This document shows positions 15,301 through 53,182 of a stretch of 64,000 nt of DNA, one piece after another. Source of the stretch: Macrostomum lignano (lineage: Eukaryota); assembly GCA_002269645.1 (NCBI GenBank), contig NIVC01001739.1, positions 179,239 to 243,238 on the forward strand. The letters run 5' to 3'. Under the pieces are notes generated by a model, which worked only from the letters and a program-made list of their open reading frames with translations, made no database searches and was not told the DNA's origin. Position 1 is the stretch's first letter; every line of letters begins with the position of its first letter. A program made the translations under genes and the position numbers.

Positions 15301-18300
15301 ACACACGGCACACACGGCACTGCAGGACACACGGCACACACGGCACTGCAGGACACACGGCACTGCAGGACACACGGCACACACGGCACTGCAGGACACA
15401 CGGCACTGCAGGACACACGGCACTGCAGGACACACGGCACTGCAGGACACACGGCACTGCAGGACACACGGCACTGCAGGACACACGGCACTGCAGGACA
15501 CACGGCACACACGGCACTGCAGGACACACGGCACACACGGCACTGCAGGACACACGGCACTGCAGGAAACACGGCACACACGGCACTGCAGGACACACGG
15601 CACTGCAGGACACACGGCACTGCAGGACACACGGCACTGCAGGACACACGGCACTGCAGGACACACGGCACTGCAGGACACACGGCACTGCAGGACACAC
15701 GGCACTGCAGGACACACGGCACTGCAGGACACACGGCACTGCAGGACACACGGCACACACGGCACTGCAGGACACACGGCACACACGGCACTGCAGGACA
15801 CACGGCACACACGGCACTGCAGGACACACGGCACACACGGCACTGCAGGACACAGGGCACTGCAGGACACAGGGCACTGCAGGACACATCGCACTGCAGG
15901 ACACACGGCACACACGGCACTGCAAGACACACGGCACTGCAGGACACACGGCACTGCAGGACACACGGCACTGCAGGACACACGACACTGCAGGACACAC
16001 GGCACTGCAGGACACAGGGCACTGCAGGACACATCGCACTGCAGGACACACGGCACTGCAGGACACATCGCAGTGCAGGACACACGGCACACACGGCACT
16101 GCAGGACACACGGCACTGCAGGACACACGGCACTGCAGGACACATCGCAGTGCAGGACAAACGGCACACACGGCACTGCAGGACACACGAAACTGCAGGA
16201 CACACGGCACTGCAGGACACAGGGCACTGCAGGACACACGACACTGCAGGACACACGGCACTGCAGGACACATCGCACTGCAGGACACACGGCACTGCAG
16301 GACACATCGCAGTGCAGGACACACGGCACACACGGCACTGCAGGACACACGGCACTGCAGGACACACGACACTGCAGGACACACGGCACTGCAGGACACA
16401 GGGCACTGCAGGACACATCGCACTGCAGGACACACGGCACTGCAGGACACATCGCAGTGCAGGACACACGGCACACACGGCACTGCAGGACACACGACAC
16501 TGCAGGACACACGACACTGCAGGACACACGACACTGCAGGACACACGGCACTGCAGGACACAGGGCACTGCAGGACACATCGCACTGCAGGACACACGGC
16601 ACTGCAGGACACATCGCAGTGCAGGACACACGGCACACACGGCACTGCAGGACACACGACACTGCAGGACACACGGCACTGCAGGACACATCGCAGTGCA
16701 GGACACACGGCACACACGGCACTGCAGGACACACGACACTGCAGGACACACGGCACTGCAGGACACACGACACTGCAGGACACACGGCACTGCAGGACAC
16801 ACGACACTGCAGGACACACGACACTGCAGGACACACGGCACTGCAGGACACACGGCACTGCAGGACACACGGCACTGCAGGACACACGGCACTGCAGGAC
16901 ACACGGCACTGCAGGGACACACGGCACACACGGCACTGCAGGACACACGGCACTGCAGGACACACGACACTGCAGGACACACGGCACTGCAGGACACACG
17001 GCACTGCAGGACACACGACACTGCAGGACACACGGCACTGCAGGACACACGACACTGCAGGACACACGGCACTGCAGGACACACGGCACTGCAGGAGACA
17101 CGGCACTGCAGGAGACATCGCAGTGCAGGACACACGGCACACACGGCACTGCAGGACACATCGCACTGCAGGACACACGACACTGCAGGACACACGGCAC
17201 TGCAGGAGACACGACACTGCAGGACACACGACACTGCAGGACACACGGCACTGCAGGACACAGGGCACTGCAGGAGACATCGCAGTGCAGGACACACGGC
17301 ACACACGGCACTGCAGGACACACGGCACTGCAGGACACATCGCACTGCAGGACACGACACTGCAGGACACACGGCACTGCAGGACACATCGCACTGCAGG
17401 ACACGACACTGCAGGACACACGGCACTGCAGGACACAGGGCACTGCAGGACACATCGCACTGCAGGACACACGGCACTGCAAGACACACGGCACTGCAGG
17501 ACACACGGCACTGCAGGACACACGGCACTGCAGGAGACACGGCACTGCAGGAGACATCGCAGTGCAGGACACACGGCACTGCAGGACACACGGCACTGCA
17601 GGACACACGGCACTGCAGGACACACGGCACACACGGCACTGCAGGACACATGGCACACACGGCACTGCAGGACACACGGCACATACGGCACTGCAGGACA
17701 CACGGCACTGCAGGACACACGGCACACACGGCACTGCAGGACACACGGCACTGCAGGACACACGGCACTGCAGGACACACGGCACTGCAGGACACACGGC
17801 ACACACGGCACTGCAGGACACACGGCACACACGGCACTGCAGGACACACGGCACTGCAGGAAACACGGCACACACGGCACTGCAGGACACACGGCACTGC
17901 AGGACACACGGCACTGCAGGACACACGGCACTGCAGGACACACGGCACTGCAGGACACACGGCACTGCAGGACACACGGCACTGCAGGACACACGGCACT
18001 GCAGGACACACGGCACTGCAGGACACACGGCACTGCAGGACACACGGCACTGCAGGACACACGGCACTGCAGGACACACGGCACTGCAGGACACACGGCA
18101 CACACGGCACTGCAGGACACACGGCACACACGGCACTGCAGGACACACGGCACACACGGCACTGCAGGACACACGGCACACACGGCACTGCAGGACACAC
18201 GGCACTGCAGGACACACGGCACACACGGCACTGCAGGACACACGGCACTGCAGGACACACGGCACTGCAGGACACACGGCACACACGGCACTGCAGGACA

Positions 18301-19728
18301 CACGGCACACACGGCACTGCAGGACACACGGCACACACGGCACTGCAGGACACACGGCACACACGGCACTGCAGGACACACGGCACTGCAGGACACACGG
18401 CACACACGGCACTGCAGGACACACGGCACACACGGCACTGCAGGACACACGGCACTGCAGGACACACGGCACACACGGCACTGCAGGACACACGGCACTG
18501 CAGGACACACGGCACTGCAGGACACACGGCACTGCAGGAGACACGGCACTGCAGGACACACGGCACTGCAGGACACACGGCACACACGGCACTGCAGGAC
18601 ATACGGCACACACGGCACTGCAGGACACACGGCACACACGGCACTGCAGGACACACGGCACACACGGCACTGCAGGACACACGGCACACACGGCACTGCA
18701 GGACACACGGCACTGCAGGACACACGGCACACACGGCACTGCAGGACACACGGCACTGCAGGACACACGGCACACACGGCACTGCAGGACACACGGCACT
18801 GCAGGACACACGGCACTGCAGGACACACGGCACTGCAGGACACACGGCACTGCAGGACACACGGCACTGCAGGACACACGGCACTGCAGGACACACGGCA
18901 CTGCAGGAGACACGGCACTGCAGGACACAGGGCACTGCAGGACACACGGCACTGCAGGACACACGACACTGCAGGACACAGGGCACTGCAGGACACACGG
19001 CACTGCAGGACACACGGCACTGCAGGAGACACGGCACTGCAGGACACAGGGCACTTCAGGACACACGACACTGCAGGACACACGACACTGCAGGACACAC
19101 GGCACTGCAGGACACACGGCACTGCAGGACACACGGCACACACGGCACTGCAGGACACACAGCACTGCAGGACACACGGCACACACGGCACTGCAGGACA
19201 CACGGCACACACGGCACTGCAGGACACACGGCACACACGGCACTGCAGGACACATGGCACACACGGCACTGCAGGACACACGGCACACACGGCACTGCAG
19301 GACACACGGCACACACGGCACTGCAGGACACACGGCACTGCAGGACACACGGCACTGCAGGAGACACGGCACTGCAGGACACACGGCACTGCAGGACACA
19401 CGACACTGCAGGACACACGGCACTGCAGGACACACGGCACTGCAGGACACACGGCACTGCAGGACACACGGCACTTCAGGAGACACGGCACTGCAGGACA
19501 CACGACACTGCAGGACACACGGCACTTCAGGACACACGGCACTGCAGGACACACGGCACTTCAGGAGACACGGCACTGCAGGACACACGACACTGCAGGA
19601 CACACGACACTGCAGGACACACGGCACTGCAGGAGACACGGCACTGCAGGACACACGGCACTGCAGGACACACGGCACTGCAGGACACACGGCACTGCAG
19701 GACACACGGCACTGCAGGACACACGGCA
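12340..19728. repeat. 7.4-kb satellite array, 17-bp unit gcactgcaggacacacg with 9-bp (acacggcac) insertion variants and higher-order duplication
   Basis: Roughly 400 units, nearly all carrying CTGCAG. The consensus unit has no stop codon in any frame, which explains the six ORFs longer than 2200 aa. Confidence 0.99.
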
Positions 19729-24344: not shown

Positions 24345-34317
<9,973 letters not shown>

Positions 34318-34472: not shown

Positions 34473-37400
34473 CCTCCAAAAGTCTGATGGTAAGCACTGC
34501 TTACCATGCGCACACCCTAGTTTCAGTCTAGGCAGAAGTCAGATGATTCAGATCAAATATAATCTATGGTAAAATTCACACTCCGTTCCGGTCGGCTATG
34601 GTAAGCAGAACTTTTAGAACGATAGCTTCCCTGATTTTTTTACTCGTAGTTTAGATCTCTTTCTCAAACAAAATAACCAACAGACGGTACAAAAATTTCA
34701 GCTTCCTTGAAATACAACTGTATACAGTAAGATCAGTTTTCGTTTATATAAATTTGATGTATATTTTTGCTGAGTGAGAAAACAATTGAGTAAGAATAAA
34801 TTGAGTATCACCGTACGCGTAAGTTAATTAAAATTTTCTGAAGAGAAACAATCTACTCGTACCAGCGTATGATGCAAACATGAAAACTGGGACATGAAAA
34901 ATGTCAGCAGAACAGAGGCGGATGCAGATTTTTTTGACCCAGGAAATTATTAAGTAGTGCAGAATTTTTGTACCTAGGAGGCGGCAGCTAAGGGAAAAGA
35001 CACAACAAAGGCGAGCTGCGCAGCTGGGGGCGCCACAGATGTATGTTGTTTGGGGGGCAGTTGCCCTCTTTGCCCCCGCATAAACCCGTATTTGGAGCAG
35101 GACAGAATTGATAACAGAAAAAGTAAATGTTATTTAATTACTATCACTTGTTTCTTAGATCTTTAAAGATGTTTTATCACGAAGTATACAAACGATTCGT
35201 TTTTGGCATTCATTCAAACAATTCTTATGGCGCATTCTCAGCAACTCGAGATGTTAGCGCCGCTAGTATTCTGAATTAATTTTTAATTATAGTCTCAGAA
35301 AGAAGAAGCTAACTGAGAGAAACCCATTTCCTCAATTTTCTTTCAGGCACACGTATAGAAGGGAATATAGCAGGAAATATTCTTCCAGCATGCGTGCACT
35401 GGGAACAAAAACTGTCAAGAATTCAAGAATGCCATTGCTGAAAGCAGGTCTCCAGACACAGTCCTGGTTCACCTGGACACGCAGGGCAGCAGTAAATTGA
35501 TCGTTTGATTCTTTCAGCTCGGTAGCAGACGCGACACCGCTTAGTTGGCCTTGGCTGACTTTCTCGGGCCGCAATTCGCATTGGGAAATGCGGGCTGACT
35601 TGGCCGAAGGCTTGAGCTGCAGCGGCTGCTCGCCTTCTGCTCATCCCAGTGCTCTGCACGAATTCACGAATGCTGGCTTCCAGAAACTTAACGAACACCT
35701 TTCGGCCGCCGCACTTACAGTATACAATCCAAGCATTTCGGACCATCTGCAAGCACAGGTGCAAACCAAGTTTCAAAAACCATTTTCTGATTTTCCGAGC
35801 AGGCTGGTAGGGCTGCATGTGGCCGTCCATTCGATCGACGTCGCCCATGCAGCGGTTGTAACTCAAAGCTGAGCGGCACTTCTGCACTGCAGCCGCTGCT
35901 CCACCTCGGGCGATTCGTCGGACTGGAACTTTTGATGCTGCCTCCTTTGTGTCCAGCAAATACAACGTTTTTAGACCGCTTTCCTTTCTTTCAACAATCT
36001 TTGCGGCCAGTACGGCACCCTTGCGCATGAAGCCGACATCATTGGGCGGCACATTTAACTGCCTGAGCTCAATCGGCACGCCTCGGTCAGCTCGTATGGT
36101 GCAAGTCAGATGAGTATCTCGATCCAGGAGGTACATAGCCAACCGATAAGAACCAAACCACTTGTCGGCAAAAATGCGGTAGCCTTGGTCCAACAGATCT
36201 TGGCAAAGCTCGACAACAATTTTTTCGCTGAATGACAGGTTTCCGCTTTGTGGATCTAAAGCAAATCTACGATTCTCCTCCGGAGTAGCATGAACTCGAA
36301 AGTTGAACAAGTAGCCTGTTTCAGACTCACAAGCACAGTACACCTTGATGCCATACCTGGCGCGCTTAGTTGGAATGTATTGCTTGAAGCCTAATCGTCC
36401 TTTGTAAAGAACCAACGATTCGTCAACACTTATTTCTTCGTCAGGTCTGTAGATGTTCACGCAGGTGTCACGCAAATTGTTCAAAAATGGACGAATATTG
36501 TACAACGGATCACCAGGTGTGGGATCCTCAAGGCAATCATAAAAGCGAAGAAAGCCGAGCAATTGCTTGAAGCGGTCTCTAGAGAGCGCCTCAGGTGCTT
36601 GAAAGTATGGTGTCGAGTGGTAGCTGCCAGTACTCCAGTAGTCATTCATCTCAGTCTTCTTGTTGCTTCCCATGTACAGGTACATGCCAATCAACTTCTT
36701 GACTTCGTTTGCGCTACATTCGTTCCACTGTAACAAACTCACAGGCAGGTCATCAGCATCCAATGAATGAATTGCTGCCCAAGCTCTACGGTTAGTCCAC
36801 ATAGCTAGATCTTCAAACAACGAATCAGACAGGAATAAACCTAAGAAGAAGGAAGTTGAGTTCTCAACATCGGCAGGCACTATTATTCCAGGATTCAGGC
36901 CAGGTGTTCCGAAAAACTCGATATCTCTCGTCGATGCGTCGTTCCCAACGATAGCAGGCCGCCACGACAACTCATCAGCAACCTGTACGTCCTCATCAAC
37001 ACTGTCCAGAACATCTGACTCACCAGAAGAATCATCTGATAAGAGGTAGTCCTCGTCGTCCGATGTCATGAGTTCAGAAATTTCGTCCACTTGGGCCATT
37101 TCAAAGCTCTTTGAGAACTGATTTTAGTATTCGGCTTAAACCAGACTGAGACAGATAAAGTATAGGAAACGAAAACTTAAGGAGTCAAAGAACCACTGTA
37201 GTATAAAGCACGACTGAATAAGCTGTCAAAAAGCTAGACGAGTAAGGAGATGGATCAGCTTCTCTGTTTGAACTGACTGGGGCTAGGAAAAGAACGTTTC
37301 TTATACTGTTCGTGTTGCCCTTTCCTCTTGTACAGGGACCAGTGTGCTTTCAGTCTAGAAACAGGCTACTTAAATGTACATTTTTGCTTATTTTTCTACC

Positions 37401-37563
37401 CCAGCCGACTGAATGTCTATTGATAAGCATTGCTTACCATGCCGACCGGAACGGAGAGAAAAAATATCTATGGCTCAGTCAGAAGCCAAATAGTCTATGG
37501 TAAGCACTGCTTACCATCCGACTGGAACGGAGATGAAAAATTTTGGGCCCAGTCTTGAAGAGG
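34473..37563 (-). mobile_element. piggyBac-family DNA transposon, 3091 bp
   Basis: TTAA at 34469-34472 and 37564-37567. Ends CCTCCAAAAGTCTG and revcomp CCTCTTCAAGACTG (10/14 match). Subterminal inverted repeats ctccgttccggtcggc(t)atggtaagca and 21-bp palindromes at both ends; contains the transposase ORF. Confidence 0.9.
35423..37099 (-). CDS. piggyBac transposase (558 aa, intact)
   Basis: Acidic N-terminus, ALSRDRF, SVDESLV (D1), KRARYGIK, FADKWF (D2), GDVDRMD (D3) and a C-terminal Cys-rich domain CRVC..CPAC..LC..CF..WH. Confidence 0.95.
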   Translation of the reverse strand: MAQVDEISELMTSDDEDYLLSDDSSGESDVLDSVDEDVQVADELSWRPAIVGNDASTRDIEFFGTPGLNPGIIVPADVENSTSFFLGLFLSDSLFEDLAMWTNRRAWAAIHSLDADDLPVSLLQWNECSANEVKKLIGMYLYMGSNKKTEMNDYWSTGSYHSTPYFQAPEALSRDRFKQLLGFLRFYDCLEDPTPGDPLYNIRPFLNNLRDTCVNIYRPDEEISVDESLVLYKGRLGFKQYIPTKRARYGIKVYCACESETGYLFNFRVHATPEENRRFALDPQSGNLSFSEKIVVELCQDLLDQGYRIFADKWFGSYRLAMYLLDRDTHLTCTIRADRGVPIELRQLNVPPNDVGFMRKGAVLAAKIVERKESGLKTLYLLDTKEAASKVPVRRIARGGAAAAVQKCRSALSYNRCMGDVDRMDGHMQPYQPARKIRKWFLKLGLHLCLQMVRNAWIVYCKCGGRKVFVKFLEASIREFVQSTGMSRRRAAAAAQAFGQVSPHFPMRIAARESQPRPTKRCRVCYRAERIKRSIYCCPACPGEPGLCLETCFQQWHS

Positions 37564-37659
37564 TTAACGAGCGGAAATGCATACCGTAAGAATCTGCATC
37601 ACTGTTCCCGAAATTTGGTTTTTTGCAATTCGTTTCCTCCTTCGATGTGCACTGGGTCA

Positions 37660-39680
37660 CGCAGTTATTGGGTCATAGAGCTAGTGGGTCATGCAGTTAT
37701 TGGGTCATAGAGCTTGTGGGTCATGCAGTTACTGGGTCATAGAGCTAGTGGGTCATGCAGTTATTGGGTCATAGAGCTTGTGGGTCATGCAGTTATTGGG
37801 TCATAGAGCTAGTGGGTCATGCAGTTATTGGGTCATAGAGCTAGTGGGTTATGGACTATAGTGGGTCATGGACTATAGTAGGTCATATAGACAAGTGGTT
37901 CATGGACTATAGTGGGTCCTGGACTATGATGGGCCATGGACTATAGTGGGTCAGAGACTAGTGGGTCGTGCAGTTATTGGGTCATAGAGCTAGAGGTTCA
38001 TGGACTAGTGGGTCATGAAGTTATTGGGTCATAGAGCTAGTGGGTCATGCAGTTATTGGGTCATAGAGCTTGTGGGTCATGCAGTTATTGGGTCATAGAG
38101 CTAGTGGGTCATGCAGTTATTGGGTCATAGAGCTAGTGGGTCATGGACTATAGTGGGTCATGGACTATAGTAGGTCATGGACTATAATGGGCCATGGACT
38201 ATAGTGGGTCATGGACTATAGTAGGTCATATAGACAAGTGGGTCATGGACTATAGTGGGTCAGAGACTAGTGGGTCGTGCAGTTATTGGGTCATAAAGCT
38301 AGTGGGTCATGCAGTTATTGGGTCATAGTTGTAGTGGGCCATGGACTAGTGGGTCATGCAGTTATTGGGCCATAAATGTGCAATCGTGTCCTTTTTAGCC
38401 CTACTGCCGCACCCCGACCCTTCCAGTCTGCCCCACCCTTTTTTTTCTCCATCAGTAATCAATGCGTACGCCACCTTGCACCTCACCCCCCATACCGTAC
38501 ATTTGTTCTTAAGTTATATTCATGTACGCGTAGGACAAGTGAAAAATATATACTGAATGGCCTGACGGCAGTCAGCATCGCGAGTCGGCCTCATGCTGAA
38601 CGCGCGGAAGACGGTAGCGGACAACGCCGAGACCTGGACCCTGACGGCGCTTTGGAGAAGCAGCTGGACGCTGCGCATGCATACGTGCTCTACACGAGGG
38701 CACGCCTGATGCGGCCTTCTGACCTGCTGCTCGAGCGGCGACTTCGACTGGCTGGCCACGTCATCCGGTCGGAGGCTCGCTGCCCTGAGCCCCCCTGTAC
38801 GAGGTGCTGCTGCTCAAGCTGCAGGGACCGCGCAGGCGAGGCCAAGGGCGAACGGCGAGATTTCTGACAGGCTTTTGACCGATGCTGGCGCCCCGGACCA
38901 AGCTGGAGGTGTGACTTTCTGAGGCCTATGGCCCAGAGACGCGCTTTCTGACTTCTCCCCCCTTTCTGGCCACTGTGTGGCTGGCGGGGTGAAGAACTTT
39001 GTTGTTGTTGTTGTTGTATATAATGAAGTCGCTGCCTGGTGGGCAGCCCCCTCCCCTTGCTTGCGTTTGGTCCGCCCCCGTTGGCTATTGAGCAAAACTA
39101 AGTACTCGTCTACCATGAAAAGTGCACAGCGAATTGCATCGGCTTTGTTCGTGAGCTGCTGTTCTTTTCCTGCTTCTCCCTAGGGCGCGGGACGTGAGCC
39201 TTGACTGGGGACCTGGCGGGTCGCAGCTTCCCACGAGTTAGGCTGCCGGCGTCGCTCCGAAGGGGGGCAGAACAACGCCTAGAGCTAGTGGGTCATGGAC
39301 TAGTGGGTCATGAAGTTATTGGTTCATAGAGCTAGTGGGTCATGGACTAGTGGGTCATGCAGTTATTGGTTCATAGAGCTAGTGGGTCATGGACTAGTGG
39401 GTCAAAGAATATTTGGTCATAGACTAGGGGGTCATAGAGCTAGTGGGTCATGGACTAGTGGGTCAAAGAATATTTGGTCATAGACTAGGGGGTCATAGAA
39501 TAGTGGGTCATGGACCAGTTGGTCATAGAATAGCGGGTCATGGACTAGTTGGTCATAGAATAGTGGGTCATGGACTAGTTGGTCATAGAATAGCGGGTCA
39601 TGGACTAGTTGGTCATAGAATAGTGGGTCATGGACTAGTTGGTCATAGAATAGTGGGTCATGGACTAGTTGGTCATAGTA
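37660..39680. repeat. gggtcat-core minisatellite (16/32-bp units 37660-38365; 16/30-bp units 39280-39680) split by a 0.9-kb non-repeat island
   Basis: Direct reading. Confidence 0.92.
38558..39016 (+). mobile_element. 5'-truncated, decayed RTE-like non-LTR retrotransposon fragment
   Basis: Translates to ERRLRLAGHVIRS and, in another frame, GPRRRGQGR (post-RT C-terminal motifs of RTE-like LINEs). Ends in a (GTT)n tail; flanked by TATATA[C/A]TGAA at 38547-38557 and 39017-39027 (11-bp TSD, 1 mismatch). Confidence 0.7.
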
Positions 39681-40029
39681 CAAGGGAATCCAAGAGCTCG
39701 AGTTTATTTCGTATATTTACTAAGACAAATTGGAATAATTATTTTTATGCTTCGTGAATTTAAATAATCAGCAAAATAGTTTTCAATAATACATGTATAT
39801 TTTATTGAGCTTTAAATATTAGTAAAATATGGCAAAATTATAGCATAATAAATCAACTTCTGCAGAAATTCTTGCATGATAAACAGACACATTAAAATTG
39901 TCACTAATAATCAACGTTTGGTAAAATAACTGCAATAAATCCGAATGAAATAAAAGTATTGATTAGTTGTTACTGTAAAATTTATTTGTTATAGTGCGAA
40001 AATTAATTCAGGACCCACTCACATCTAAC

Positions 40030-41090
40030 AATGAGCAATTGCCATCTGTCTATGACCAACTCACATCTGTCTATGACTAACTCACATCTGTCTACGACCA
40101 ACTCACATCTGTCTATGACCAACTCACATTTATCAATGACCAGCTCCCATCTGTCTATGACCAACTTATTTCTGTCTATGACCAACTCACATCTGTCTAT
40201 GACCAGCTCAGATCTGTCAATGACCAACTCAGATCTATCAGTGACCAAATCACATCTATCAATGACCAACTCAGATCTATCAATGACCAAATCACATCTA
40301 TCAATGACCAACTCAGATCTATCAATGACCAAATCACATCTATCAATGACCAACTCACATCTATCAGTGACCAACTCCATCTATCAATGACCAACTCCAT
40401 CTATCAGTGACCAAATCACATCTATCAATGACCAAATCACATCGATCAATGACCAACTCACATCTATCAATGACCAACTCCATCTATCAGTGACCAAATC
40501 ACATTTATCAATGACCAATTCCAACTCGCATTTATCAATGACCAACTCACATCTATCAATGACCAACTCACATCTATCAGTGACCAACTCCATCTATCAA
40601 TGACCAACTCCATCTATCAGTGATCAAATCACATCTATCAATGACCAAATCGCATCGATCAATGACCAACTCACATCTATCAATGACCAACTCACATCTA
40701 TCAATGACCAACTCACATCTGTCAATGACCAACTCACATCTATCAATGACCAACTCACATCTGTCTATGACCAACTTATTTCTGTCTATGACCAGCTCAG
40801 ATCTGTCAATTACCAACTCAGATCTATCAGTGACCAAATCACATCTATCAATGACCAACTCACATCTATCAGTGACCAACTCCATCTATCAATGACCAAC
40901 TCCATCTATCAGTGACCAAATCACATCTATCAATGACCAAATCACATCGATCAATGACCAACTCACATCTATCAATGACCAACTCACATCTGTCAATGAC
41001 CAACTCACATCTGTCAATGACCAACTCACATCTATCAATGACCAACTCACATCTGTCAATGGCCAACTCACATTTATCAAAGACCAACTG
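40030..41090. repeat. 21-bp minisatellite (acatctatcaatgaccaactc) downstream of the CRYM stop codon
   Basis: About 50 units; reverse complement of the array at 41620-42235. Confidence 0.96.
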
Positions 41091-41206
41091 ATGCCATCTT
41101 CAATGATAAATTAACATTATACCATAGTCAACAGACCTATAAGCAACTCAAAAAACTCATGAAAACCAATGAGCAATTAGCATCTACCTGTCACCAATGA
41201 CCAGTT

Positions 41207-44200
41207 TCACTCCTTCATCCGGAGATCCCACACTAGCCGGGCAGTGGCGGCGTCCTCAATGCCCAGTCCAAGCGACTTGAAGACGGTGAGGCCGCCGCGG
41301 CTGGCCCGGGCCTCGCGGAACCGCTCGGGATGGGCGATGAGCTCGCCAAGCTCCGCGTGCACCGTCGCCTTGTTGACGATGACGTCGCCCGACTCGCTGC
41401 TCGCCGACTCTCGACTGTCAGCGACGAGGAACGCCGCCGAGGTGACGGACTCGTCCAGCTCGCGCTGGTCCGGCCGGCACGCGCCGACAGCGTTCACGTG
41501 ACACAGGCGGGGCAGCCAATCGGCGCGCAGCACCGGGTCACGTGACGAGGTCACCGTGCACACAATGTCCGCCTGGTCTACGGCAGCCTTGGCCGAGTCG
41601 CAGTCCTCAACCTGAGAGGGATTGATAAATATGAGTTGGTCATTGATAGATATGAGTTGGTCATTGATAAATATGAGTTGGTCATTGATAGAAATGAGTT
41701 GGTCATTGATAGATATGAGTTGGTCATTGATATATAACAATTGGTCATTGATAGATATGAGCTGGTCATTGATAGATATGAGTTGGTCATTGATAGATGC
41801 GAGTTGGTCATTGATAGATGCGAGTTGGTCATTGATAGATGCGAGTTGGTCATTGATAGATGCGAGTTGGTCATTGATAGATGCGAGTTGGTCATTGATA
41901 GATGCGAGTTGGTCATTGATAGATGCGAGTTGGTCATTGATAGATGCGAGTTGGTCATTGATAGATGCGATTTGGTCATTGATAGATATGAGTTGGTCAT
42001 TGATAGATTCGAGTTGGTCATTGATAGATATGAGTTGACCATTGATAGATTCGAGTTGGTCATTGATAGATAATATTTGGTCATTGATAGATATGAGTTG
42101 GTCATTGATAGATTCAAGCTGGACATTGATAGATAATATTTGGTCATTGATAGATATGAGTTGGTCATTGATAGATGCGAGTTGGACATTGATAGATAAC
42201 ATTTGGTCATTGATAGACATGAGTTGCTCATTGATGGATGCGCTTGTTAAATCTCTAACCCGTCCTTTCAGCTAGATTACCTTCATGACATCCGGCTTGA
42301 ATTTGGCAGACAGCATAATCTTTTCTACCAGAGCAGCTCGCCTCTCGGGGTTCCGACTGTGCACCCGGATGCATTCAATGGCGAACAGAGTGGCTATGGC
42401 CTCGAAGTGGCTGAACGCTTGGGCGCCGGAGCCCAGCAAAGCCAGGGTTCGACTTTGCGGATGAGCAAGGTGCCTTCGAGATAAAGAGGTTGGGTCAGGA
42501 TAAGCAAAGTGGAGTGACGTCATATTTGAAGGCTCGATTGAGAAATGTATATCAAACGGCAAGAGCAGATAGCGTGGCGGTACATCAAAGGACATGGGCA
42601 GATAGGATGGCGGTACTCGTACAACAAAGTACATGGGCAGAAAGGGTGGCGGTACATCAAAGGACATTGGCAGATAGGGTGGCGGCACTTCAAAGGACAT
42701 GTGTAGATAGGGTGGCGGTACATCAAAGGACATGTGTAGATAGGGTGGCGGTACATCAAAGGACATGTGTAGATAGGGTGGCGGTACATCAAAGGACATG
42801 GGTAGATAGGGCGGCGGCACATCAAAGGACAGAGACAGATAGGGTGACGGCACATCGAAATGACATGGGCAGATAGGGCTGGCGGTACATCAAAGGACAT
42901 GGCAGATAGGATGGCGGCACATCAAAAGACATGGGCAGATAGGGTGGGCGGCACATCAAAGGAACTGAGAGTAGGTCCCACTGCAGGCTAACCTGGATGC
43001 CACAGCACTGGCAGCAGCAGTTCTCATACAGGTGATCTCCTCAGCGTCCATCAGAGCTTGCAGGCTGCCACTCTCGGGGTCAAACAAGGTCACAATGCCT
43101 TGGTGACTGGGCAGGTCAGTGTTTCCAGGAAACACAGTGACCAGCTTGCAGGCGAGGGCGGAGTCGGGCGCGCTGTAGCAGGGCATGGTGAGCAGCAAGC
43201 CGGTGCTGCCGGAGTCCACTTTAGTGCGCATAGGCTGACAAAACTCGGACTTCTTAGTCGAGTAGGTGATGAGGGATCGTTCCACGGTGGGGATCAGATC
43301 CTCATAGGAGAGCAATCCTTTGATTTCTTGGCCCGAGATGAATGGGGGTGTACCGTGTTGTTGTTGAGTTGTTGCCATGGTAACATGCATTTTTTTCTGA
43401 ATTTCTATACTGACTGCCAATGTTAATGAATCAAGTGCAGGTTCACTCACATAACTTAAATTACTTAGGTACATCAATAATAGACTATGGTATTATTTTG
43501 GACAATAAAGTGACTCATTTAGCAAAGAATGATGCACCTGATGTGCAGATGTGCCACCTCAGCGAATCATAAAAGTCCATAGCCCTTTCATGTGCCACCT
43601 CAGCGAATCATAAAAGTCCATAGCCCTTTCATGTGCCACCTCAGCGAATCATAAAAGTCCATAACCCTTTTGACGTGCCGCCTTGGCAAATCATAAACCT
43701 TTGACGTGCCGCCTCGGAAAATTATAACCCTTTGATGTGCCGCCTTGGCAAACTCATAACCCTTAATTTGATGTGCCGCCTTGGCAAACTCATAACCCTT
43801 TGATGTGCCGCCTTGGCAAACTCATAACCCTTTGATGTGCCGCCTTGGCAAACTCATAACCCTTAATTTGATGTGCCGCCTTGGCAAACTCATAACCCTT
43901 TGATGTGCCGCCTTGGCAAACTCATAACCCTTTGATGTGCCGCCTTGGCAAACTCATAACCCTTTGATGTGCCGCCTTGGCAAACTCATAACCCTTTGAT
44001 GTGCCGCCTTAGCAAACGCTGATCTTTTGATGCAGAGCAAACGTCTAGCAAGTGGCTGGAAATGCCAAGCAAAAATCTACCTGGATGCCACAGCACTGGC
44101 AGCAGCAGTTCGCATACAGGTGATCTCCTCAGCGTCCATCAGAGCTTGCAGACTGCCATTGTTGGGGTCAAACAAGGTCACAATGCCTTGGTGACTGGGC

Positions 44201-44445
44201 AGGTCATGGTTTCCAGGAAACACAGTGACCAGCTTGCAGGCGAGAGCAGCATCAGGCGCATTGTAGCAGGGCATGGTGGCCAAAATGCCATTGTTGCTAG
44301 TGAAAACTTTTTCTCTGAGTGGCTGGTGGAATTGGGACTTCCAGTTTGAATAAGTGACTAAAGAGCGTTCCACAACTGTGATGAGGTCCTCATAGGTTAG
44401 GAAAGCTTTAATTTCAGGACCAGTAATAAATACAGGGTTGCTCAT
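41207..44445 (-). CDS. CRYM: Mu-crystallin / ketimine reductase (ornithine cyclodeaminase family) with two alternative first coding exons
   Basis: Exon 1a 44081-44445 and exon 1b 42993-43378 both end ...MRTAAASAVASR at AG|GT, phase 2. Shared exon 2 is 42281-42473 (LALLGSGAQA, Rossmann motif) and exon 3 is 41207-41611 (NAVGA..P..RELD, VFKSLGLGIED). About 320 aa via 1a and about 327 aa via 1b. Confidence 0.92.
41620..42235. repeat. 21-bp minisatellite (gagttggtcattgatagatgc) filling CRYM intron 2
   Basis: About 29 units; inverted relative to 40030-41090. Confidence 0.96.
42570..42962. repeat. 33-bp minisatellite with core ggcgg[c/t]acatcaaagg (CRYM intron downstream of exon 1b)
   Basis: About 12 units. 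Confidence 0.92.
43548..44016. repeat. 32-41 bp minisatellite with core cctttgatgtgccgcc (between CRYM exons 1a and 1b)
   Basis: Core is the exact reverse complement of the 42570-42962 core. Confidence 0.92.
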
Positions 44446-45777
44446 TGTGCTAGAAACATAGTTTGGTTTAATAAATATTTAGCGATGGTCACGAAACCCA
44501 TAGAAAATATTAGGAAATTTGAAAATATTATTAAAATATCATAATGTAAACAACAAAACCTAAAATACAATTCTTGAAACTCTAATCTCAAATCTGCCTT
44601 ATCTTTTCATCTTTTTCATGCATGATTGCATTGCATTATAAAAGTAAATGTTGGAGCAATTCGTATATAATAATATAATCTATTTTAGCATTGTTCATCC
44701 TAATATCAATATTCAATAACTGACTGACTGAAAATTATTACATAGTTTAATGTCATGATTCAATACTTTTATGGCCAATAAAATCATATTTTTTGTGTGT
44801 TTCTTATACATTTAAGTATTTTATCCGATGGTTTAATGATTGAATACTTGAATGGCTAAATGGCCATATGATTCACAGTTTTCACTTTACTTTTTACATC
44901 ACCTTTGTCCCTTGCAAAGTTTGAATCTGTTTGATAGAACTCAAACTAACATTTTTGTGATTTCAAAAGGTAGTAAGACATAAGGCATAAGGCATTTGCT
45001 TAAGACAATGATGTTCTACTTTTTTGCGTTCTCGTGCAAAATGGATTTGGCTGTAGAAAGTGATCGACAGGTATTTTTAACAGCATAAACTAATTGAAAT
45101 CTTAAGCCGTTAAGGTAGCATATACTGTGGAAACAAAATGCAATTACAGAAAACTGTCTGTCTGTATTTTTCTTCTAAGAAAAGGTAGTTCAGTCATTGA
45201 CCAAAGGGTCAAAGCTGTCACTTCGTAACTAACAACGATAATAATGGTGGAAATATATATATATTTATTAGAAATTTAGAATATTAAAATTTCAAGAGCG
45301 ATAATTCTAGATCTTTTTTAGGGGGGCAAACGGCAACTTAAACCGAGGGACTCTGTGACATCCGCCAGCTTTTCGTTTTTCGAGGAGGCTCTTCCCCCTC
45401 CTTTTCGTTCTGGCCTGGCGTGGAAGCGGCTAGCTTCCTCGTCTTGGTCTGCTGGTGGGGGACGGACCCCCCTGCTGCTTTTTTGCGGGGCAGGTGGCTG
45501 CTAAGTAGTTGGCTGCTGGCTAAGCGCCAACTACCCATCGGCAGCCCTTAGTTGCAACTGGTACCACACGGGTTCTCGAGGGCCGCTCTTGTGGGGGAGG
45601 GCTCGGGCGTCGGCTGTCAACTCGACCTGGCGCCTGTGTCCCAAGCCCGCAGCCGGCCTCCCGCCCCCTGATCTTGCAGAGTGTGGACCGGGGGCCTGCC
45701 GGAGCCTCGCCTGGGAGCAATCCTGGGATAAGACGGCAACCCAAAGCTTCTCTGCTGTTTACCGTGGCAGAGGGTAG

Positions 45778-50608
<4,831 letters not shown>

Positions 50609-53182
50609 TCCTTGTGCTCTTTTACCTTGGGGTTGCGATAGGGGCCTCGCGGCCTATTCGCGGCGCCTGCGCCCCCCGTCAGTAGTAAGTAAGTAAGTAA
50701 GTAGATCTTTTTTAAGCGGGTGAAAAAATAAAACAGGAAAAACATAAGTTTATTTTTAAAAATGAATAGAGCTGTTTAACTAACTTATTAAATATTTAAT
50801 ATAAAAATTTTTCATCCTTAACAAATGAGCTACAATATACAGCATTTAAATTTGTTTCAAATAGTTTTTAGAGTCTCGTGCTACTTTTAATTCAGCAATT
50901 GAGTGTTATTTTTGCCTCTCTTGCAAACTGCTCTATAAGAAGGAACAATAATAAATCACTTAAAGATACGCATATAGAGCTGCATCTCTATTTTTGTAGA
51001 TTAGGAAACATGCACCATTGCAGCTATGAATTGTAAACTCTAAGTCGAAAATCGCAACACTTCAAATTCACACAGAATTATAATTGTAAGTTAAGGGCCT
51101 ATCAATCATATTAATTTTGACCAGTGTAGTAGGACAGTGGTTTTTTCACAATCAAGATCCGTAATTGTGCTTTTGCTATTGTAATCAGTGCTTGTTCAAT
51201 TGTTCTAGAAATTTGTATAGGCCTAGGTAGGCATAGGGAGTAACAACTGAATGATTCCATGAAATTAAGCCTATTTAATGCCAATTGCCAATGAATTCGA
51301 AGGCCTATGGTAAGGGTCTATTTTAGTTATGCTCTCTGTAATAGGCCTATGGACCTAGTTATGGTAAAGCTGTTGAAATTTAATCTAATTTTCTATAGGG
51401 TCTAGTATACTTATCCAGACTGTCCAGACAGTGGATTTTAGATATTATTTTCAGGTTTAGTTATATAGATTAATGATTGAACAGTGCAAGTTTCATAAAA
51501 AAGCAGTTGAGCAGTTTTTTTAAATTAATTGCTTATCTACCTAGATAGATAGGCCTACTTATTTATACAGATTTTAGATATTATGTTTATAGTTCCTCTT
51601 TGTCTGCTTTGTTAATATAGTACTTGGCTATAGTAGCTTACCCAAGAGGGTAAGGAGGGAGGTAATTGGCCCCCTTAGTCTATATCAAGACTTTAAAAAA
51701 TCAAGAAGGACAAGTGCATCTTTGCCAAAATATAGAGCTATCCTCTCTGCCTCTCTCTTGACTCTTAGATCTTTAGCCTTTAAAATCTATTTCCTTTTTC
51801 AATAAATTTCTGGGTATTCTATCTGGACCTTAGTTTTTTAAACCTCTCAATAGTAATCTATCCTACTTAATGTTTATTTTCTTATTGATGTTTTACAATA
51901 GTCCACTCTTTGATCATATGTATCCTAATGAGATTATCCAAGTGTGTTAGTTCTTTTCTTTAATATCTGATCTTCCCTCTTCCGTCTTTTCTTCTTTTCT
52001 TCTCTCTTTTCTCTTATCCTCTCTTCTCTTTTCCTTGATTTTTTCTTGTCTTTCCTCCACTTTCTCTTCTTTCCTCTCTTTTTTTATTCTCTTAACTTTC
52101 TTTCTTCTATCTCCTTCCTCTTCTCTATTCCCTTTCCTATCCCCTCTTTTGGCCCACAGTTATGCTCTAGGCTGTCTATTTAGTCTAGGTCCTCAAAATT
52201 AAAAAAAGTTTGCTAACCCCTAATCTAAGTAGTTCTTTTTTCTTACTAGTAGTATTATTATTTACTAGTAGCATTCTTATTTCTAAACTAGTAGCATTCT
52301 TGTTATATACCAAAAGGTCTATTACTAATATTTTATTTTTTGTATATATTTCTTAGAATAATTCTTCTTGGAATATATCTGCTATTTAAGAATTTAACTA
52401 TCTAGTCTTTAGGTAAAACCAAGAGTAGAAAGTCATGAGTTTCTTTATACTATATATTTATCTCCAAGATCTATAAGTATGAGTATTTGTATTATATTTC
52501 TTTTATCTATTTATGAGCATTTTGCTCTTTTTAGAAATAAGAAAGTCTAAAATAGGATTCTCAATGTTTACTTGGAATACAACTATAAGTCTTACATCTT
52601 ACCAAATTTTGTATTTGTTTATACTAATTTTTTGGTTCATTTAAAGCAAAAAGTGAATGTGAATATTATTATAAAATGTGTATAAATTAAAAAATAGTAG
52701 AGTTGTATATACATTAAATTTGTACTAAATTTTTTGTTACAAAAAAGAAAGTTTTTTATATATAATATTATATATTTTATATTTTTTAAACCTATTTTTT
52801 CTAAACTACATCTTATAATATGGTCTTAGTTTAAAACTTAGGTCTATTTTCATTCTGCAGTGTATTTACTCAAGATATAGGGCCATAGCACTCTTATGAT
52901 GTCACAAGGCATGCCATCTTTAGACTTTGATTATGTAAGTATTTTTAAACTAAAAACTATTTTCTTGATGATAAATTAATGTTAATGTTTTATGCAGATT
53001 TTGATACATAATATTGACACTTATGCTTGCTAATACAGAAGGTGCCATACTATTTCTAACATTACAACTTTATTTAGGCAAATTCATTCTAAATCTTTCA
53101 GAACAATTAATTCACATGCCAGAACTATTAAAAGAAATTCTGAGGAAAAACTTCATAAACAGAGAAACAGAACAAAATTTTA

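What the first reader, a model, noticed from the sequence alone, without database searches (positions are those of the whole stretch)
42570..44445. Duplicated CRYM first exon bracketed by mutually inverted minisatellites: candidate repeat-built RNA switch for exon choice
Seen: two paralogous first coding exons (1a 44081-44445, 1b 42993-43378) end at the same phase-2 donor and share one copy of exons 2-3; no second copy of exons 2-3 lies between them. The array upstream of 1b (43548-44016, about nine copies of cctttgatgtgccgcc, e.g. 43797-43812) and the array just downstream of it (42570-42962, about 12 copies of ggcgg[c/t]acatcaaagg, e.g. 42813-42828 and 42947-42962) are exact reverse complements over a 16-bp core, with near-matching periods (32 vs 33 bp). 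Both exons have an AG acceptor a few nt before their ATG (44450-44451, 43397-43398), and splicing 1a into that 1b acceptor is out of frame. Known: variable-first-exon loci (UGT1A, clustered protocadherins) and pairing-driven exon choice (Dscam docking/selector). In CRYM the N-terminal part contributes to substrate binding and dimerisation, while the shared exons carry the NAD(P)H Rossmann motif. Inference: a transcript starting at 1a contains both arrays and could loop out 1b with its splice sites, whereas one starting at 1b lacks the upstream arm and keeps 1b. That would give two enzymes with different N-terminal domains on one dinucleotide-binding domain.
Basis: partly seen in the sequence, partly recalled or inferred. 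Interest (0 to 1): 0.88.

Follow-up and report, generated by a model that had tools for sequence, protein, structure and literature searches.

The report
Duplicated first exon between complementary minisatellites
A flatworm (Macrostomum lignano) mu-crystallin/ketimine-reductase gene really does have two alternative first coding exons, and the second sits between two minisatellites that could base-pair in the RNA; but similar inverted repeat pairs flank ordinary exons nearby, so the pairing is more likely a by-product of repeat turnover than an evolved splicing switch.

Summary
The window is Macrostomum lignano, Mlig_3_7 scaffold NIVC01001739.1. On the minus strand lies a three-exon CRYM (ketimine reductase) gene. 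Its first coding exon is duplicated in tandem: 1a at 44445-44081 and 1b at 43378-42993. Both end at a phase-2 donor, and exons 2 and 3 occur once.

Arrays A (44017-43549) and B (42963-42547) share the 16-nt core GGCGGCACATCAAAGG in opposite orientation: 23 hits against 0.03 expected, found nowhere else in the window. The minimum-energy fold pairs A with B (234 pairs) and loops out 1b.

The duplication is not an artefact. A second copy of the locus and two older gene models have it. The 5' halves of 1a and 1b are saturated at synonymous sites yet conserved in protein (pS 0.78, pN 0.25). The 3' halves are kept alike by gene conversion.

The "switch" reading is untested and weakened:
- 40% of the window is tandem arrays.
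- The last exon of the same gene sits between a much stronger inverted pair (C/D).
- The core is no better conserved than the rest of the unit.
- Array variants break sense-strand pairing but not antisense pairing.
- Only 1b-2-3 is annotated.

If it works, the mechanism is the known one of reverse-complementary intron matches promoting exon skipping. Interest is moderate.

The parts
44081..44445 (-). Exon 1a: alternative first coding exon, 121 codons plus 2 nt, donor CAG|GTAGAT
   Evidence: Open from ATG to GT, phase 2. tblastn 100% to the 1a-2-3 model. Intact in L001, P0001 and P0122. pN 0.25 against pS 0.78 versus 1b in the 5' half.
43549..44017 (-). Array A: minisatellite in the interval between 1a and 1b. 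Sense unit is GGCGGCACATCAAAGG+GTTATGAGTTTGCCAA (32 nt, about 11 copies), followed by 41-nt variant units (about 3.6 copies)
   Evidence: TRF, repeat families D2-D4 and D6, 13 core hits on the - strand. Copy numbers differ in L001: 7 and 6.6.
43379..43548 (-). Unique AT-rich spacer upstream of 1b. It holds 11 AG dinucleotides and two further in-frame ATGs (43474, 43390)
   Evidence: frames and pyrimidine content of each AG. The GenBank model PAA91884.1 starts its coding sequence at the equivalent of 43474.
42993..43378 (-). Exon 1b: alternative first coding exon, 128 codons plus 2 nt, donor CAG|GTTAGC. It resembles the single N-terminus of a related species' transcript more than 1a does
   Evidence: 1b-2-3 is the RNA-seq-guided GenBank model for the L001 copy.
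42547..42963 (-). Array B: minisatellite filling most of the 1b-exon 2 intron. Sense unit is CCTTTGATGT[G/A]CCGCC+ACCCTATCTGCCCATGT (33 nt, about 12 copies)
   Evidence: TRF, 10 core hits on the + strand, 234 predicted A:B base pairs.
42281..42473 (-). Exon 2 (shared), carrying the GSGAQA dinucleotide-binding motif
   Evidence: Aligns to mouse and human CRYM structures.
41621..42239 (-). Array C: 21-nt minisatellite filling intron 2 up to about 10 nt from the exon 3 acceptor
   Evidence: TRF, sequence. Inverted relative of array D.
41207..41611 (-). Exon 3 (shared, last coding exon, includes the stop codon)
40012..41089 (-). Array D: 21-nt minisatellite, reverse complement of array C over the whole unit. 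Probably lies inside the 3' UTR
   Evidence: TRF. 13-15 shared inverted k-mers with C. C+exon 3+D folds at -1277 against -562 kcal/mol for the parts. The first AATAAA after the stop is at 39986.

Best explanation
This is a Macrostomum lignano CRYM/ketimine-reductase gene whose first coding exon was duplicated in tandem long ago.

Shown:
- Both copies, 1a and 1b, remain intact and constrained.
- Their 3' halves are repeatedly homogenised by gene conversion.
- Both end at the same phase-2 donor, so either can be joined to the single exon 2.

Inferred:
- Which exon ends up in the mRNA is set mainly by where the transcript starts: a start upstream of 1a, or a start in or near the 1a-1b interval.
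- The introns, like much of this genome, have been overrun by fast-evolving minisatellites. Arrays A and B descend from one seed of about 16-23 nt laid down in opposite orientations. They are therefore complementary and would pair in any pre-mRNA that spans both, looping out 1b.
- This duplex is a by-product of local repeat turnover, not an evolved selector. At most it reinforces skipping of 1b in transcripts that start at 1a, in the way reverse-complementary intron matches promote exon skipping elsewhere.
For: Gene identity:
- Best hits are M. lignano CRYM.
- E = 1e-61 to mouse CRYM 4bv8 and 9e-60 to human 2i99.

Structure and single copy of exons 2-3.

The duplication is genuine:
- The same layout is found in a second scaffold, L001, with different array copy numbers.
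- Two ML2 models also show it.

Constraint and conversion:
- 5' half pS 0.775, pN 0.249.
- 3' half pS 0.074.
- The P0001 locus carries LLDAEEITCI in both 1a and 1b, where the window has LMDAEEITCM in both.

The substrate-binding Arg/Lys/Arg positions (QP[LM]R, CKLV, MRTAA) are kept in both exons.

Pairing is predicted:
- 234 A:B pairs; -540 kcal/mol against -345 for the parts and -466 when B is flipped.

By-product reading:
- 40% of the window is tandem arrays, and 5 of 8 related array pairs are inverted.
- C/D brackets the last exon with a gain of about 715 kcal/mol, and D is probably transcribed.
- Two iGluR exons lie between weakly inverted arrays.
- The core is not preferentially conserved.
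- The antisense strand folds better than the sense strand.

Precedent for the modest effect I allow: a 13-nt reverse-complementary match drives exon skipping in C. elegans zip-2 (PMC8330042).
Against: - There is no transcript evidence for 1a at all, so 'alternative first exon' rests on sequence constraint alone.
- Ten or so near-perfect 16-bp helices within 1.1 kb are far more than is needed for an effect in vivo, so calling the pairing incidental may understate it.
- Outside the CRYM locus only one adjacent array pair in the window is inverted-related. The base rate therefore rests on a small local sample.
- The geometry does fit a bridge: the first exact core lies about 70 nt after the 1a donor, and the last core about 100 nt before the exon 2 acceptor.
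- The two available copies are 95-100% identical, so no real test of conservation or compensation was possible.
Confidence: 0.5

Rival explanations
1. The A:B minisatellite duplex is an evolved RNA switch. In transcripts that begin at 1a it loops out 1b and brings the 1a donor next to exon 2. Transcripts that begin at 1b lack arm A and keep 1b.
For: - The complementarity is exact and highly non-random.
- Matching periods of 32 and 33 nt let the helices stack in register.
- The energy gain is about 75-195 kcal/mol.
- The bridge geometry places the 1a donor and the exon 2 acceptor within about 170 nt of each other.
- Both exons are constrained.
- Short reverse-complementary matches are known to suffice for exon skipping (PMC8330042).
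- Tandem exon duplication is known to generate regulatory pairings (PMC6071210).
Against: - No 1a-exon 2 product is on record.
- There is no competing partner for the core.
- The last exon of the same gene has a much stronger bracket that cannot be a choice device.
- The core is no better conserved than the non-core part of the unit.
- 7 of 8 variant B cores give true mismatches in the sense RNA, while most give G.U in the antisense.
- A 4-nt insertion inside the core has spread to two A units in this copy.
- The annotated 1b coding sequence starts 75 nt or less from arm A.
Confidence: 0.2
2. 1a is a relic exon that is not used in mature mRNA. It looks intact only because gene conversion from 1b keeps refreshing it, and the gene makes 1b-2-3 only.
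For: - Only 1b-2-3 is annotated, from RNA-seq-guided assembly.
- The related species' transcripts have a 1b-like N-terminus.
- 1a has lower GC3 in its 5' half (0.48 against 0.68).
- 1a has more lineage-specific amino-acid changes (9 against 4).
- Conversion is demonstrably active.
Against: - The 5' half is not homogenised, yet it shows pN 0.25 against saturated pS 0.78.
- 1a's amino-acid distance to the outgroup (dN 0.285) equals that of 1b (0.298).
- The reading frame, start codon, donor and substrate-binding residues are intact in every copy seen.
- The transcript assembler used an isoform-fraction filter of 0.75, which would drop a minor isoform.
Confidence: 0.15
3. The A:B pairing acts mainly on other RNA outcomes. 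It could drive back-splicing of 1b into a circular RNA, or create long double-stranded RNA that triggers editing or small-RNA production and lowers expression of this gene copy.
For: - An exon flanked by reverse-complementary intron sequence is the standard architecture for circular RNA (PMC8330042).
- 1b has a donor 30 nt before B and several AGs after A.
- The predicted duplexes are very long, especially C:D.
Against: - All AGs upstream of 1b have weak pyrimidine tracts.
- There are no RNA data.
- The helices are 16 bp interrupted by 16-17-nt internal loops, a poor substrate for dsRNA-processing enzymes (inference).
Confidence: 0.1
4. The tandem exon pair is an assembly or haplotype-collapse artefact.
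For: The genome is repeat-rich and partly duplicated, and the DV1 line carries extra large chromosomes.
Against: - The same 1a-A-1b-B order appears in two different Mlig_3_7 scaffolds with different array copy numbers.
- It also appears in two gene models from the older ML2 assembly.
- 1a and 1b differ at saturation at synonymous sites in their 5' halves, far beyond allelic divergence.
Confidence: 0.02

Closest known systems
Reverse-complementary matches in flanking introns that promote exon skipping and back-splicing (C. elegans zip-2, PMC8330042; Alu pairs and the mouse Sry inverted repeats, from my own knowledge)
   Same: Complementary sequences lie in the two introns that flank one exon and are predicted to pair across it and loop it out. 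This is the mechanism that would apply here if the pairing has any effect.
   Different: - The arms are two different minisatellites that share only a 16-23-nt core per 32-33-nt unit. They would form a ladder of short helices, not one stem.
- The looped exon is a first-type exon without a convincing acceptor.
- No skipped or circular product has been observed.
Docking/selector control of mutually exclusive exons (Dscam, 14-3-3xi, srp, ATE1; PMC6071210, PMC7797038)
   Same: The exons are tandem-duplicated and of similar length and phase, with long-range intronic complementarity. Tandem duplication is proposed as the source of such structures.
   Different: - There is one complementary pair only, with no competing selector.
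- The duplicated exons are 5' exons with their own start codons, not internal cassettes.
- The complementary elements are not in homologous positions relative to the two exon copies (both lie downstream of a donor, in opposite orientation).
Variable-first-exon loci (UGT1A, clustered protocadherins; from my own knowledge)
   Same: Several paralogous first exons, each with its own ATG and donor, are joined to one set of constant exons. Paralogous exons are homogenised by gene conversion in part of their length.
   Different: Only two variable exons are present. Separate promoters are unproven. The organism also uses spliced-leader trans-splicing, which offers another way to create the second 5' end.
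Foldback-type transposable elements of Drosophila, whose long inverted arms are built of tandem subrepeats (from my own knowledge)
   Same: Two inverted arms, each a tandem array of short units, flank a unique middle segment.
   Different: - A and B are alike over only half of the unit.
- The middle segments are essential exons of a host gene (1b, and exon 3 for C/D).
- I did not look for target-site duplications or other copies of the arms; the core is absent from the rest of the window.

Membership tests
Ornithine cyclodeaminase / mu-crystallin (CRYM, ketimine reductase) family | Full-length similarity to family members with solved structures, and the Pfam OCD_Mu_crystall domain | tested here: met
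   E = 1.6e-61 to mouse CRYM (4bv8) and 9e-60 to human CRYM (2i99) over residues 4-315. PF02423 is recorded on all close homologues.
Ornithine cyclodeaminase / mu-crystallin (CRYM, ketimine reductase) family | Dinucleotide-binding GxGxxA/G motif and conserved Arg/Lys/Arg substrate-binding positions | tested here: met
   LGSGAQA lies in exon 2. QP[LM]R, CKLV and MRTAA are present in both 1a and 1b and align to QPVR, TKLV and KRTAA of mouse and human CRYM. The functional role of these residues is from my own knowledge of the family.
Variable (alternative) first coding exons on shared constant exons | Two or more paralogous first exons in tandem, each with a start codon and a donor of the same phase, and one copy of the downstream exons | tested here: met
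Variable (alternative) first coding exons on shared constant exons | Mature mRNAs joining each first exon separately to the constant exons | tested here: inconclusive
   1b-2-3 exists as the RNA-seq-guided GenBank model PAA91884.1. No 1a-2-3 protein is in the 5.8-billion-cluster collection. ML2 models fuse 1a and 1b. No read data were available.
Variable (alternative) first coding exons on shared constant exons | A separate transcription start (or trans-splice site) for each first exon | not testable with these tools
   No 5'-end or spliced-leader read data. Neither AG matches the published trans-splice motif [T/C]TNCAG: 1a has TTTCTAG and 1b has ATTCAG.
Docking/selector RNA-pairing control of mutually exclusive exons | [quoted passage not shown] | tested here: not met
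   The core occurs only in arrays A and B, in one orientation each. There is no third site in the window.
Docking/selector RNA-pairing control of mutually exclusive exons | Conservation or compensatory change of the pairing across species | not testable with these tools
   Only two copies of the locus were available, at 95-100% identity. The related species is represented by a transcript only. Within the arrays the core is no better conserved than the rest of the unit.
Reverse-complementary intron matches flanking an exon (exon skipping / circular RNA architecture) | Complementary sequences in both flanking introns, pairing across the exon in preference to local pairing | tested here: met
   23 core hits against 0.03 expected. 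234 A:B pairs in the minimum-energy fold. -540 kcal/mol against -466 with B flipped and -345 for the parts. These are thermodynamic predictions only.
Reverse-complementary intron matches flanking an exon (exon skipping / circular RNA architecture) | The flanked exon has both a usable acceptor and a usable donor; skipped or circular products are observed | tested here: inconclusive
   A donor is present. The 11 candidate AGs all have pyrimidine content of 0.40-0.60. Products could not be examined.
Foldback-type transposon | Inverted arms homologous along their length, enclosing non-essential DNA, dispersed in the genome | tested here: not met
   A and B share 16-23 of 32-33 nt per unit. The enclosed DNA is a constrained coding exon. 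The core is absent elsewhere in the window.

The most novel reading that the evidence does not exclude
The minisatellite ladder is a working long-range RNA bridge. About ten periodic 16-bp helices between two unrelated-looking arrays hold the 1a donor next to the exon 2 acceptor and hide 1b, so array copy number, which differs between genome copies, tunes the ratio of two CRYM isoforms. More broadly, M. lignano may tolerate or exploit inverted intronic minisatellites as bridges for splicing across repeat-bloated introns.
Probability: 0.15. Interest if true: 0.7.

Novelty: new member of a known kind. Interest (0 to 1): 0.38.

Why it matters
If both exons are used, the flatworm makes two ketimine reductases. 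They would differ in the first 70 or so residues of the dimerisation/substrate domain and share the catalytic core. That is a tidy case of isoform diversification by 5'-exon duplication, with ongoing partial gene conversion.

The complementary minisatellites offer a natural experiment. Their copy number differs between the two copies of the locus, and M. lignano can be made transgenic. The question of whether repeat-built intron pairing affects splice choice could therefore be tested directly.

If the pairing is inert, the locus still shows that very large predicted intron/UTR duplexes (hundreds of kcal/mol around exon 3) are compatible with a conserved, constrained gene. That is a useful caution against reading function into complementary repeats in repeat-rich genomes.

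Tried and rejected
- **Assembly or haplotype artefact.** Rejected: two scaffolds and two older models share the layout, and the 5' halves are saturated at synonymous sites.
- **Search for any 1a-exon 2 protein or fragment.** Nothing found with the full-length query, the 161-aa junction query or the exact look-up. The second search scored only 93 candidates and did not even re-list P0001, so it is a weak negative.
- **Known RNA families or a spliced-leader gene in the locus.** None.
- **Wider sample of M. lignano DNA for a base rate of inverted array pairs.** The last protein search, with the iGluR exon, returned nothing. The LINE ORF is not on record. The piggyBac look-up returned the window's own scaffold. 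The base rate therefore rests on the window alone.
- **Extra conservation of the paired core within arrays.** Not seen in 3 of 4 arrays; nominal p = 0.014 in one.
- **Literature on this gene model or on Macrostomum minisatellites.** Nothing found. The ML2 genome paper is not in the searchable library, so I cannot say whether the fused ML2 models rest on RNA.
- **Foldback-transposon origin.** Rejected for A/B (see membership test).
- **Homology between the sequences just downstream of the two donors or upstream of the two ATGs.** None visible in direct orientation. The arrays are therefore not simply the duplicated intron.
Full report
**Source and gene**

The best protein matches to the spliced exons are Macrostomum lignano 'ketimine reductase mu-crystallin' entries. 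A look-up of the window's piggyBac transposase returned a locus (L003, GCA_002269645.1 scaffold NIVC01001739.1) that is 100% identical to window 47099-25423. The window is therefore part of the Mlig_3_7 assembly of this free-living flatworm.

The gene lies on the minus strand and has three coding exons:
- exon 1, as 1a (44445-44081) or 1b (43378-42993);
- exon 2 (42473-42281);
- exon 3 (41611-41207, ending in TGA).

The product aligns end to end with mouse and human CRYM structures (E = 1.6e-61 and 9e-60). The GSGAQA dinucleotide-binding motif is in exon 2.

**Check of the observation**

- Both first exons are open from ATG to a GT donor and have lengths of 365 and 386 nt, so both leave phase 2.
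- tblastn of either spliced protein against the window finds exon 1 twice and exons 2 and 3 once.
- Tandem Repeats Finder reports array A at 43660-44017 (32 nt, 11 copies) continuing as 41-nt units at 43549-43697, and array B at 42547-42963 (33 nt, 12.4 copies).
- The 16-mer GGCGGCACATCAAAGG, allowing two mismatches, occurs 23 times against 0.03 expected from shuffles. There are 10 hits on the plus strand, all in B, and 13 on the minus strand, all in A. There are none elsewhere in 64 kb.
- Weak similarity continues for about 7 nt past the core (GGACATGG against GGGTTATGA). This points to common descent of a seed of about 23 nt, not convergence.

Minor corrections:
- Only two B units are exact. 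Five read GGCGGTAC.
- Two A units in this copy carry a 4-nt insertion inside the core.
- The AG at 43398-43397 is indeed out of frame with the 1a donor. But it is one of 11 AGs in the 170-nt spacer, five of which are in frame, and all follow weak pyrimidine tracts.

**The duplication is real and old**

A second Mlig_3_7 scaffold (L001, NIVC01000070.1) is colinear with the window. It has the same order, 1a-A-1b-B-exon 2-C-exon 3-D, but different array copy numbers: 7 and 6.6 against 11 and 3.6 for the two parts of A, and 14.4 against 12.4 for B. Two gene models from the older ML2 assembly also contain both exons.

Nei-Gojobori counts were made separately for the two halves of the exon.

| Comparison | pS | pN |
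|---|---|---|
| 1a vs 1b, 5' half (up to ...APD.A) | 0.775 (saturated) | 0.249 |
| 1a vs 1b, 3' half | 0.074 | 0.040 |

The amino-acid distance of 1a to a related species' transcript (L002, 70% identical protein) is dN 0.285. That equals the distance for 1b (0.298). A pseudo-exon would not keep this pattern, so 1a has been a coding exon for most of its history.

The similarity in the 3' half stops exactly at the donor. In the P0001 locus both 1a and 1b read LLDAEEITCI, where both read LMDAEEITCM in the window, and P0001's 1b has taken 1a's DPNNG. This is the signature of continuing gene conversion between the two exons within each locus.

**Transcript evidence**

The GenBank annotation of Mlig_3_7 derives from RNA-seq-guided assembly (StringTie/TACO plus the TBONE boundary pipeline, PMC5730564).

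- For the L001 copy it gives one product, PAA91884.1. This is 1b-2-3 with an N-terminal extension that starts at the equivalent of window 43474, only 75 nt after the end of array A.
- The window's own copy is not annotated.
- No 1a-2-3 protein or fragment is present in the protein collection.
- The ML2 models join 1a, a mini-exon made from the first 1.5 units of array A, and 1b in one frame. I could not establish whether RNA supports these.
- The assembler's isoform-fraction filter of 0.75 means a minor 1a isoform could have been dropped.

Use of 1a is therefore inferred from constraint only.

**Predicted RNA structure**

The sense RNA from the 1a donor to the exon 2 acceptor (1607 nt) has a minimum free energy of -540.3 kcal/mol. 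The fold contains 234 A:B base pairs, arranged as a ladder of core helices in register, with 1b in the loop.

| RNA folded | MFE (kcal/mol) |
|---|---|
| Full interval, sense strand | -540.3 |
| Three parts folded separately, summed | -345.3 |
| Control with B reverse-complemented | -465.6 |
| Full interval, antisense strand | -602.3 |

The inverted orientation is therefore worth about 75 kcal/mol over the flipped control and about 195 over isolated parts.

The geometry suits a bridge. The first exact core is about 70 nt after the 1a donor, and the last core is about 100 nt before the exon 2 acceptor. However, the arrays fill most of both intervals, so this geometry follows almost automatically.

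**Evidence against a dedicated switch**

1. Forty per cent of the window is tandem array. M. lignano is known for an unusually high simple- and tandem-repeat content (PMC5730564).
2. Among 33 arrays, 8 pairs share frequent 11-mers, and 5 of these pairs are inverted.
3. Arrays C and D are reverse complements over their whole 21-nt unit and bracket exon 3, the indispensable last coding exon. C+exon 3+D folds at -1277 kcal/mol against -562 for the parts. The first AATAAA after the stop codon lies at 39986, just beyond D, so D is probably transcribed (inference).
4. In the neighbouring glutamate-receptor gene, two apparent exons (about 27915-28105 and 28197-28322, plus strand) lie between arrays that share an inverted 9-10-nt core.
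5. Within the arrays the paired core is no better conserved than the unpaired remainder (Fisher p = 0.62, 0.45 and 0.83; one array p = 0.014).
6. The commonest B variant creates a C.A mismatch in the sense RNA but a G.U pair in the antisense RNA. Only one of eight variant B cores stays pairing-compatible in the sense strand, and the antisense strand folds better.
7. No third copy of the core exists that could compete, so the docking/selector design is absent.

**Most likely working**

Shown: two constrained paralogous first exons, one set of constant exons, partial gene conversion, and complementary arrays with strong predicted pairing.

Inferred:
- Exon choice follows the transcript's 5' end.
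- In a transcript that starts at 1a, the 1a donor must outcompete the nearer 1b donor for the exon 2 acceptor. An A:B duplex would favour that by looping out 1b.

Deleting a 13-nt reverse-complementary match in C. elegans zip-2 abolishes exon skipping (PMC8330042), so an effect here is plausible if such transcripts exist.

I judge the arrays to be a by-product of local minisatellite turnover that may have this side effect (confidence 0.5). I do not think they form a selected switch (0.2). The alternatives are that 1a is unused (0.15), or that the pairing mainly produces circular or double-stranded RNA (0.1).

**Comparison with known systems**

- The gene is a clear CRYM family member.
- The exon arrangement matches variable-first-exon loci in layout, but separate starts are unproven.
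- The pairing matches the architecture of reverse-complementary intron matches. It does not match docking/selector systems, which need competing partners (PMC6071210).
- The unusual feature is that the arms are two different minisatellites sharing an inverted core at nearly equal periods. I know of no described case, but no function has been shown either.

I therefore file it as a new member of a known kind, with moderate interest.

Noticed in passing
window 42993-43190 and 44081-44278 (3' halves of exons 1b and 1a): The 3' halves of the two first exons are about 95% identical, and the similarity ends exactly at the splice donor. The 5' halves are saturated at synonymous sites. A third copy of the locus (P0001) has the same two derived residues in both exons. 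This indicates ongoing gene conversion confined to half of the exon.
   Followed up: yes
window 40012-41089 and 41621-42239: Arrays D and C are reverse complements over the whole 21-nt unit and bracket the last coding exon of CRYM. The predicted gain from pairing is about 715 kcal/mol. Array C runs to within about 10 nt of the exon 3 acceptor, so the branch site must lie inside a repeat unit.
   Followed up: partly
window 45321-50700 (+): A 5.4-kb non-LTR retrotransposon is inserted about 880 bp upstream of the 1a ATG. It has a 1272-aa ORF (endonuclease, reverse transcriptase, RNase H), a (GTAA)n tail and a 13-bp target-site duplication TAGATCTTTTTTA. It is absent from the other copy of the locus (L001), where the site is empty.
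   Followed up: partly
window 34473-37563 (-): A 3.1-kb piggyBac-type element with an intact 558-aa transposase (DDE_Tnp_1_7, E = 9e-65) and a TTAA duplication. L001 has the empty TTAA site, so this is an insertion polymorphism of a possibly active element. GenBank annotates it as a gene.
   Followed up: partly
window about 1800-34317 (+): An ionotropic glutamate-receptor gene (870-aa GenBank product; Lig_chan exon at 1817-2722) spans more than 30 kb because its introns hold giant arrays, including a 7.4-kb array of a 17-nt unit at 12345-19728. Two apparent exons at about 27915-28105 and 28197-28322 lie between arrays that share an inverted 9-10-nt core.
   Followed up: partly
window 37100-47099 (= L003 1-10000): The CRYM copy in the window is intact but carries no gene call in the GenBank annotation, whereas the near-identical copy on NIVC01000070.1 does. 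The two copies differ by the LINE insertion upstream and the piggyBac insertion downstream.
   Followed up: no
window 43985-44047 (first units of array A): Each A unit contains AAGG|GTTATGAG, a passable splice donor. Older ML2 gene models use an AG at 44049-44048 and one such donor to make an in-frame mini-exon linking 1a to 1b. Whether any RNA does this is unknown.
   Followed up: partly
window 37653-38373 and 39280-39678: Two further arrays (unit TAGTGGGTCA...) downstream of the gene are related to arrays C and D (AGT[T/G]GGTCA). On the plus strand the orientations run E, E, D (inverted), C. This is a local family of related minisatellites in mixed orientation.
   Followed up: partly
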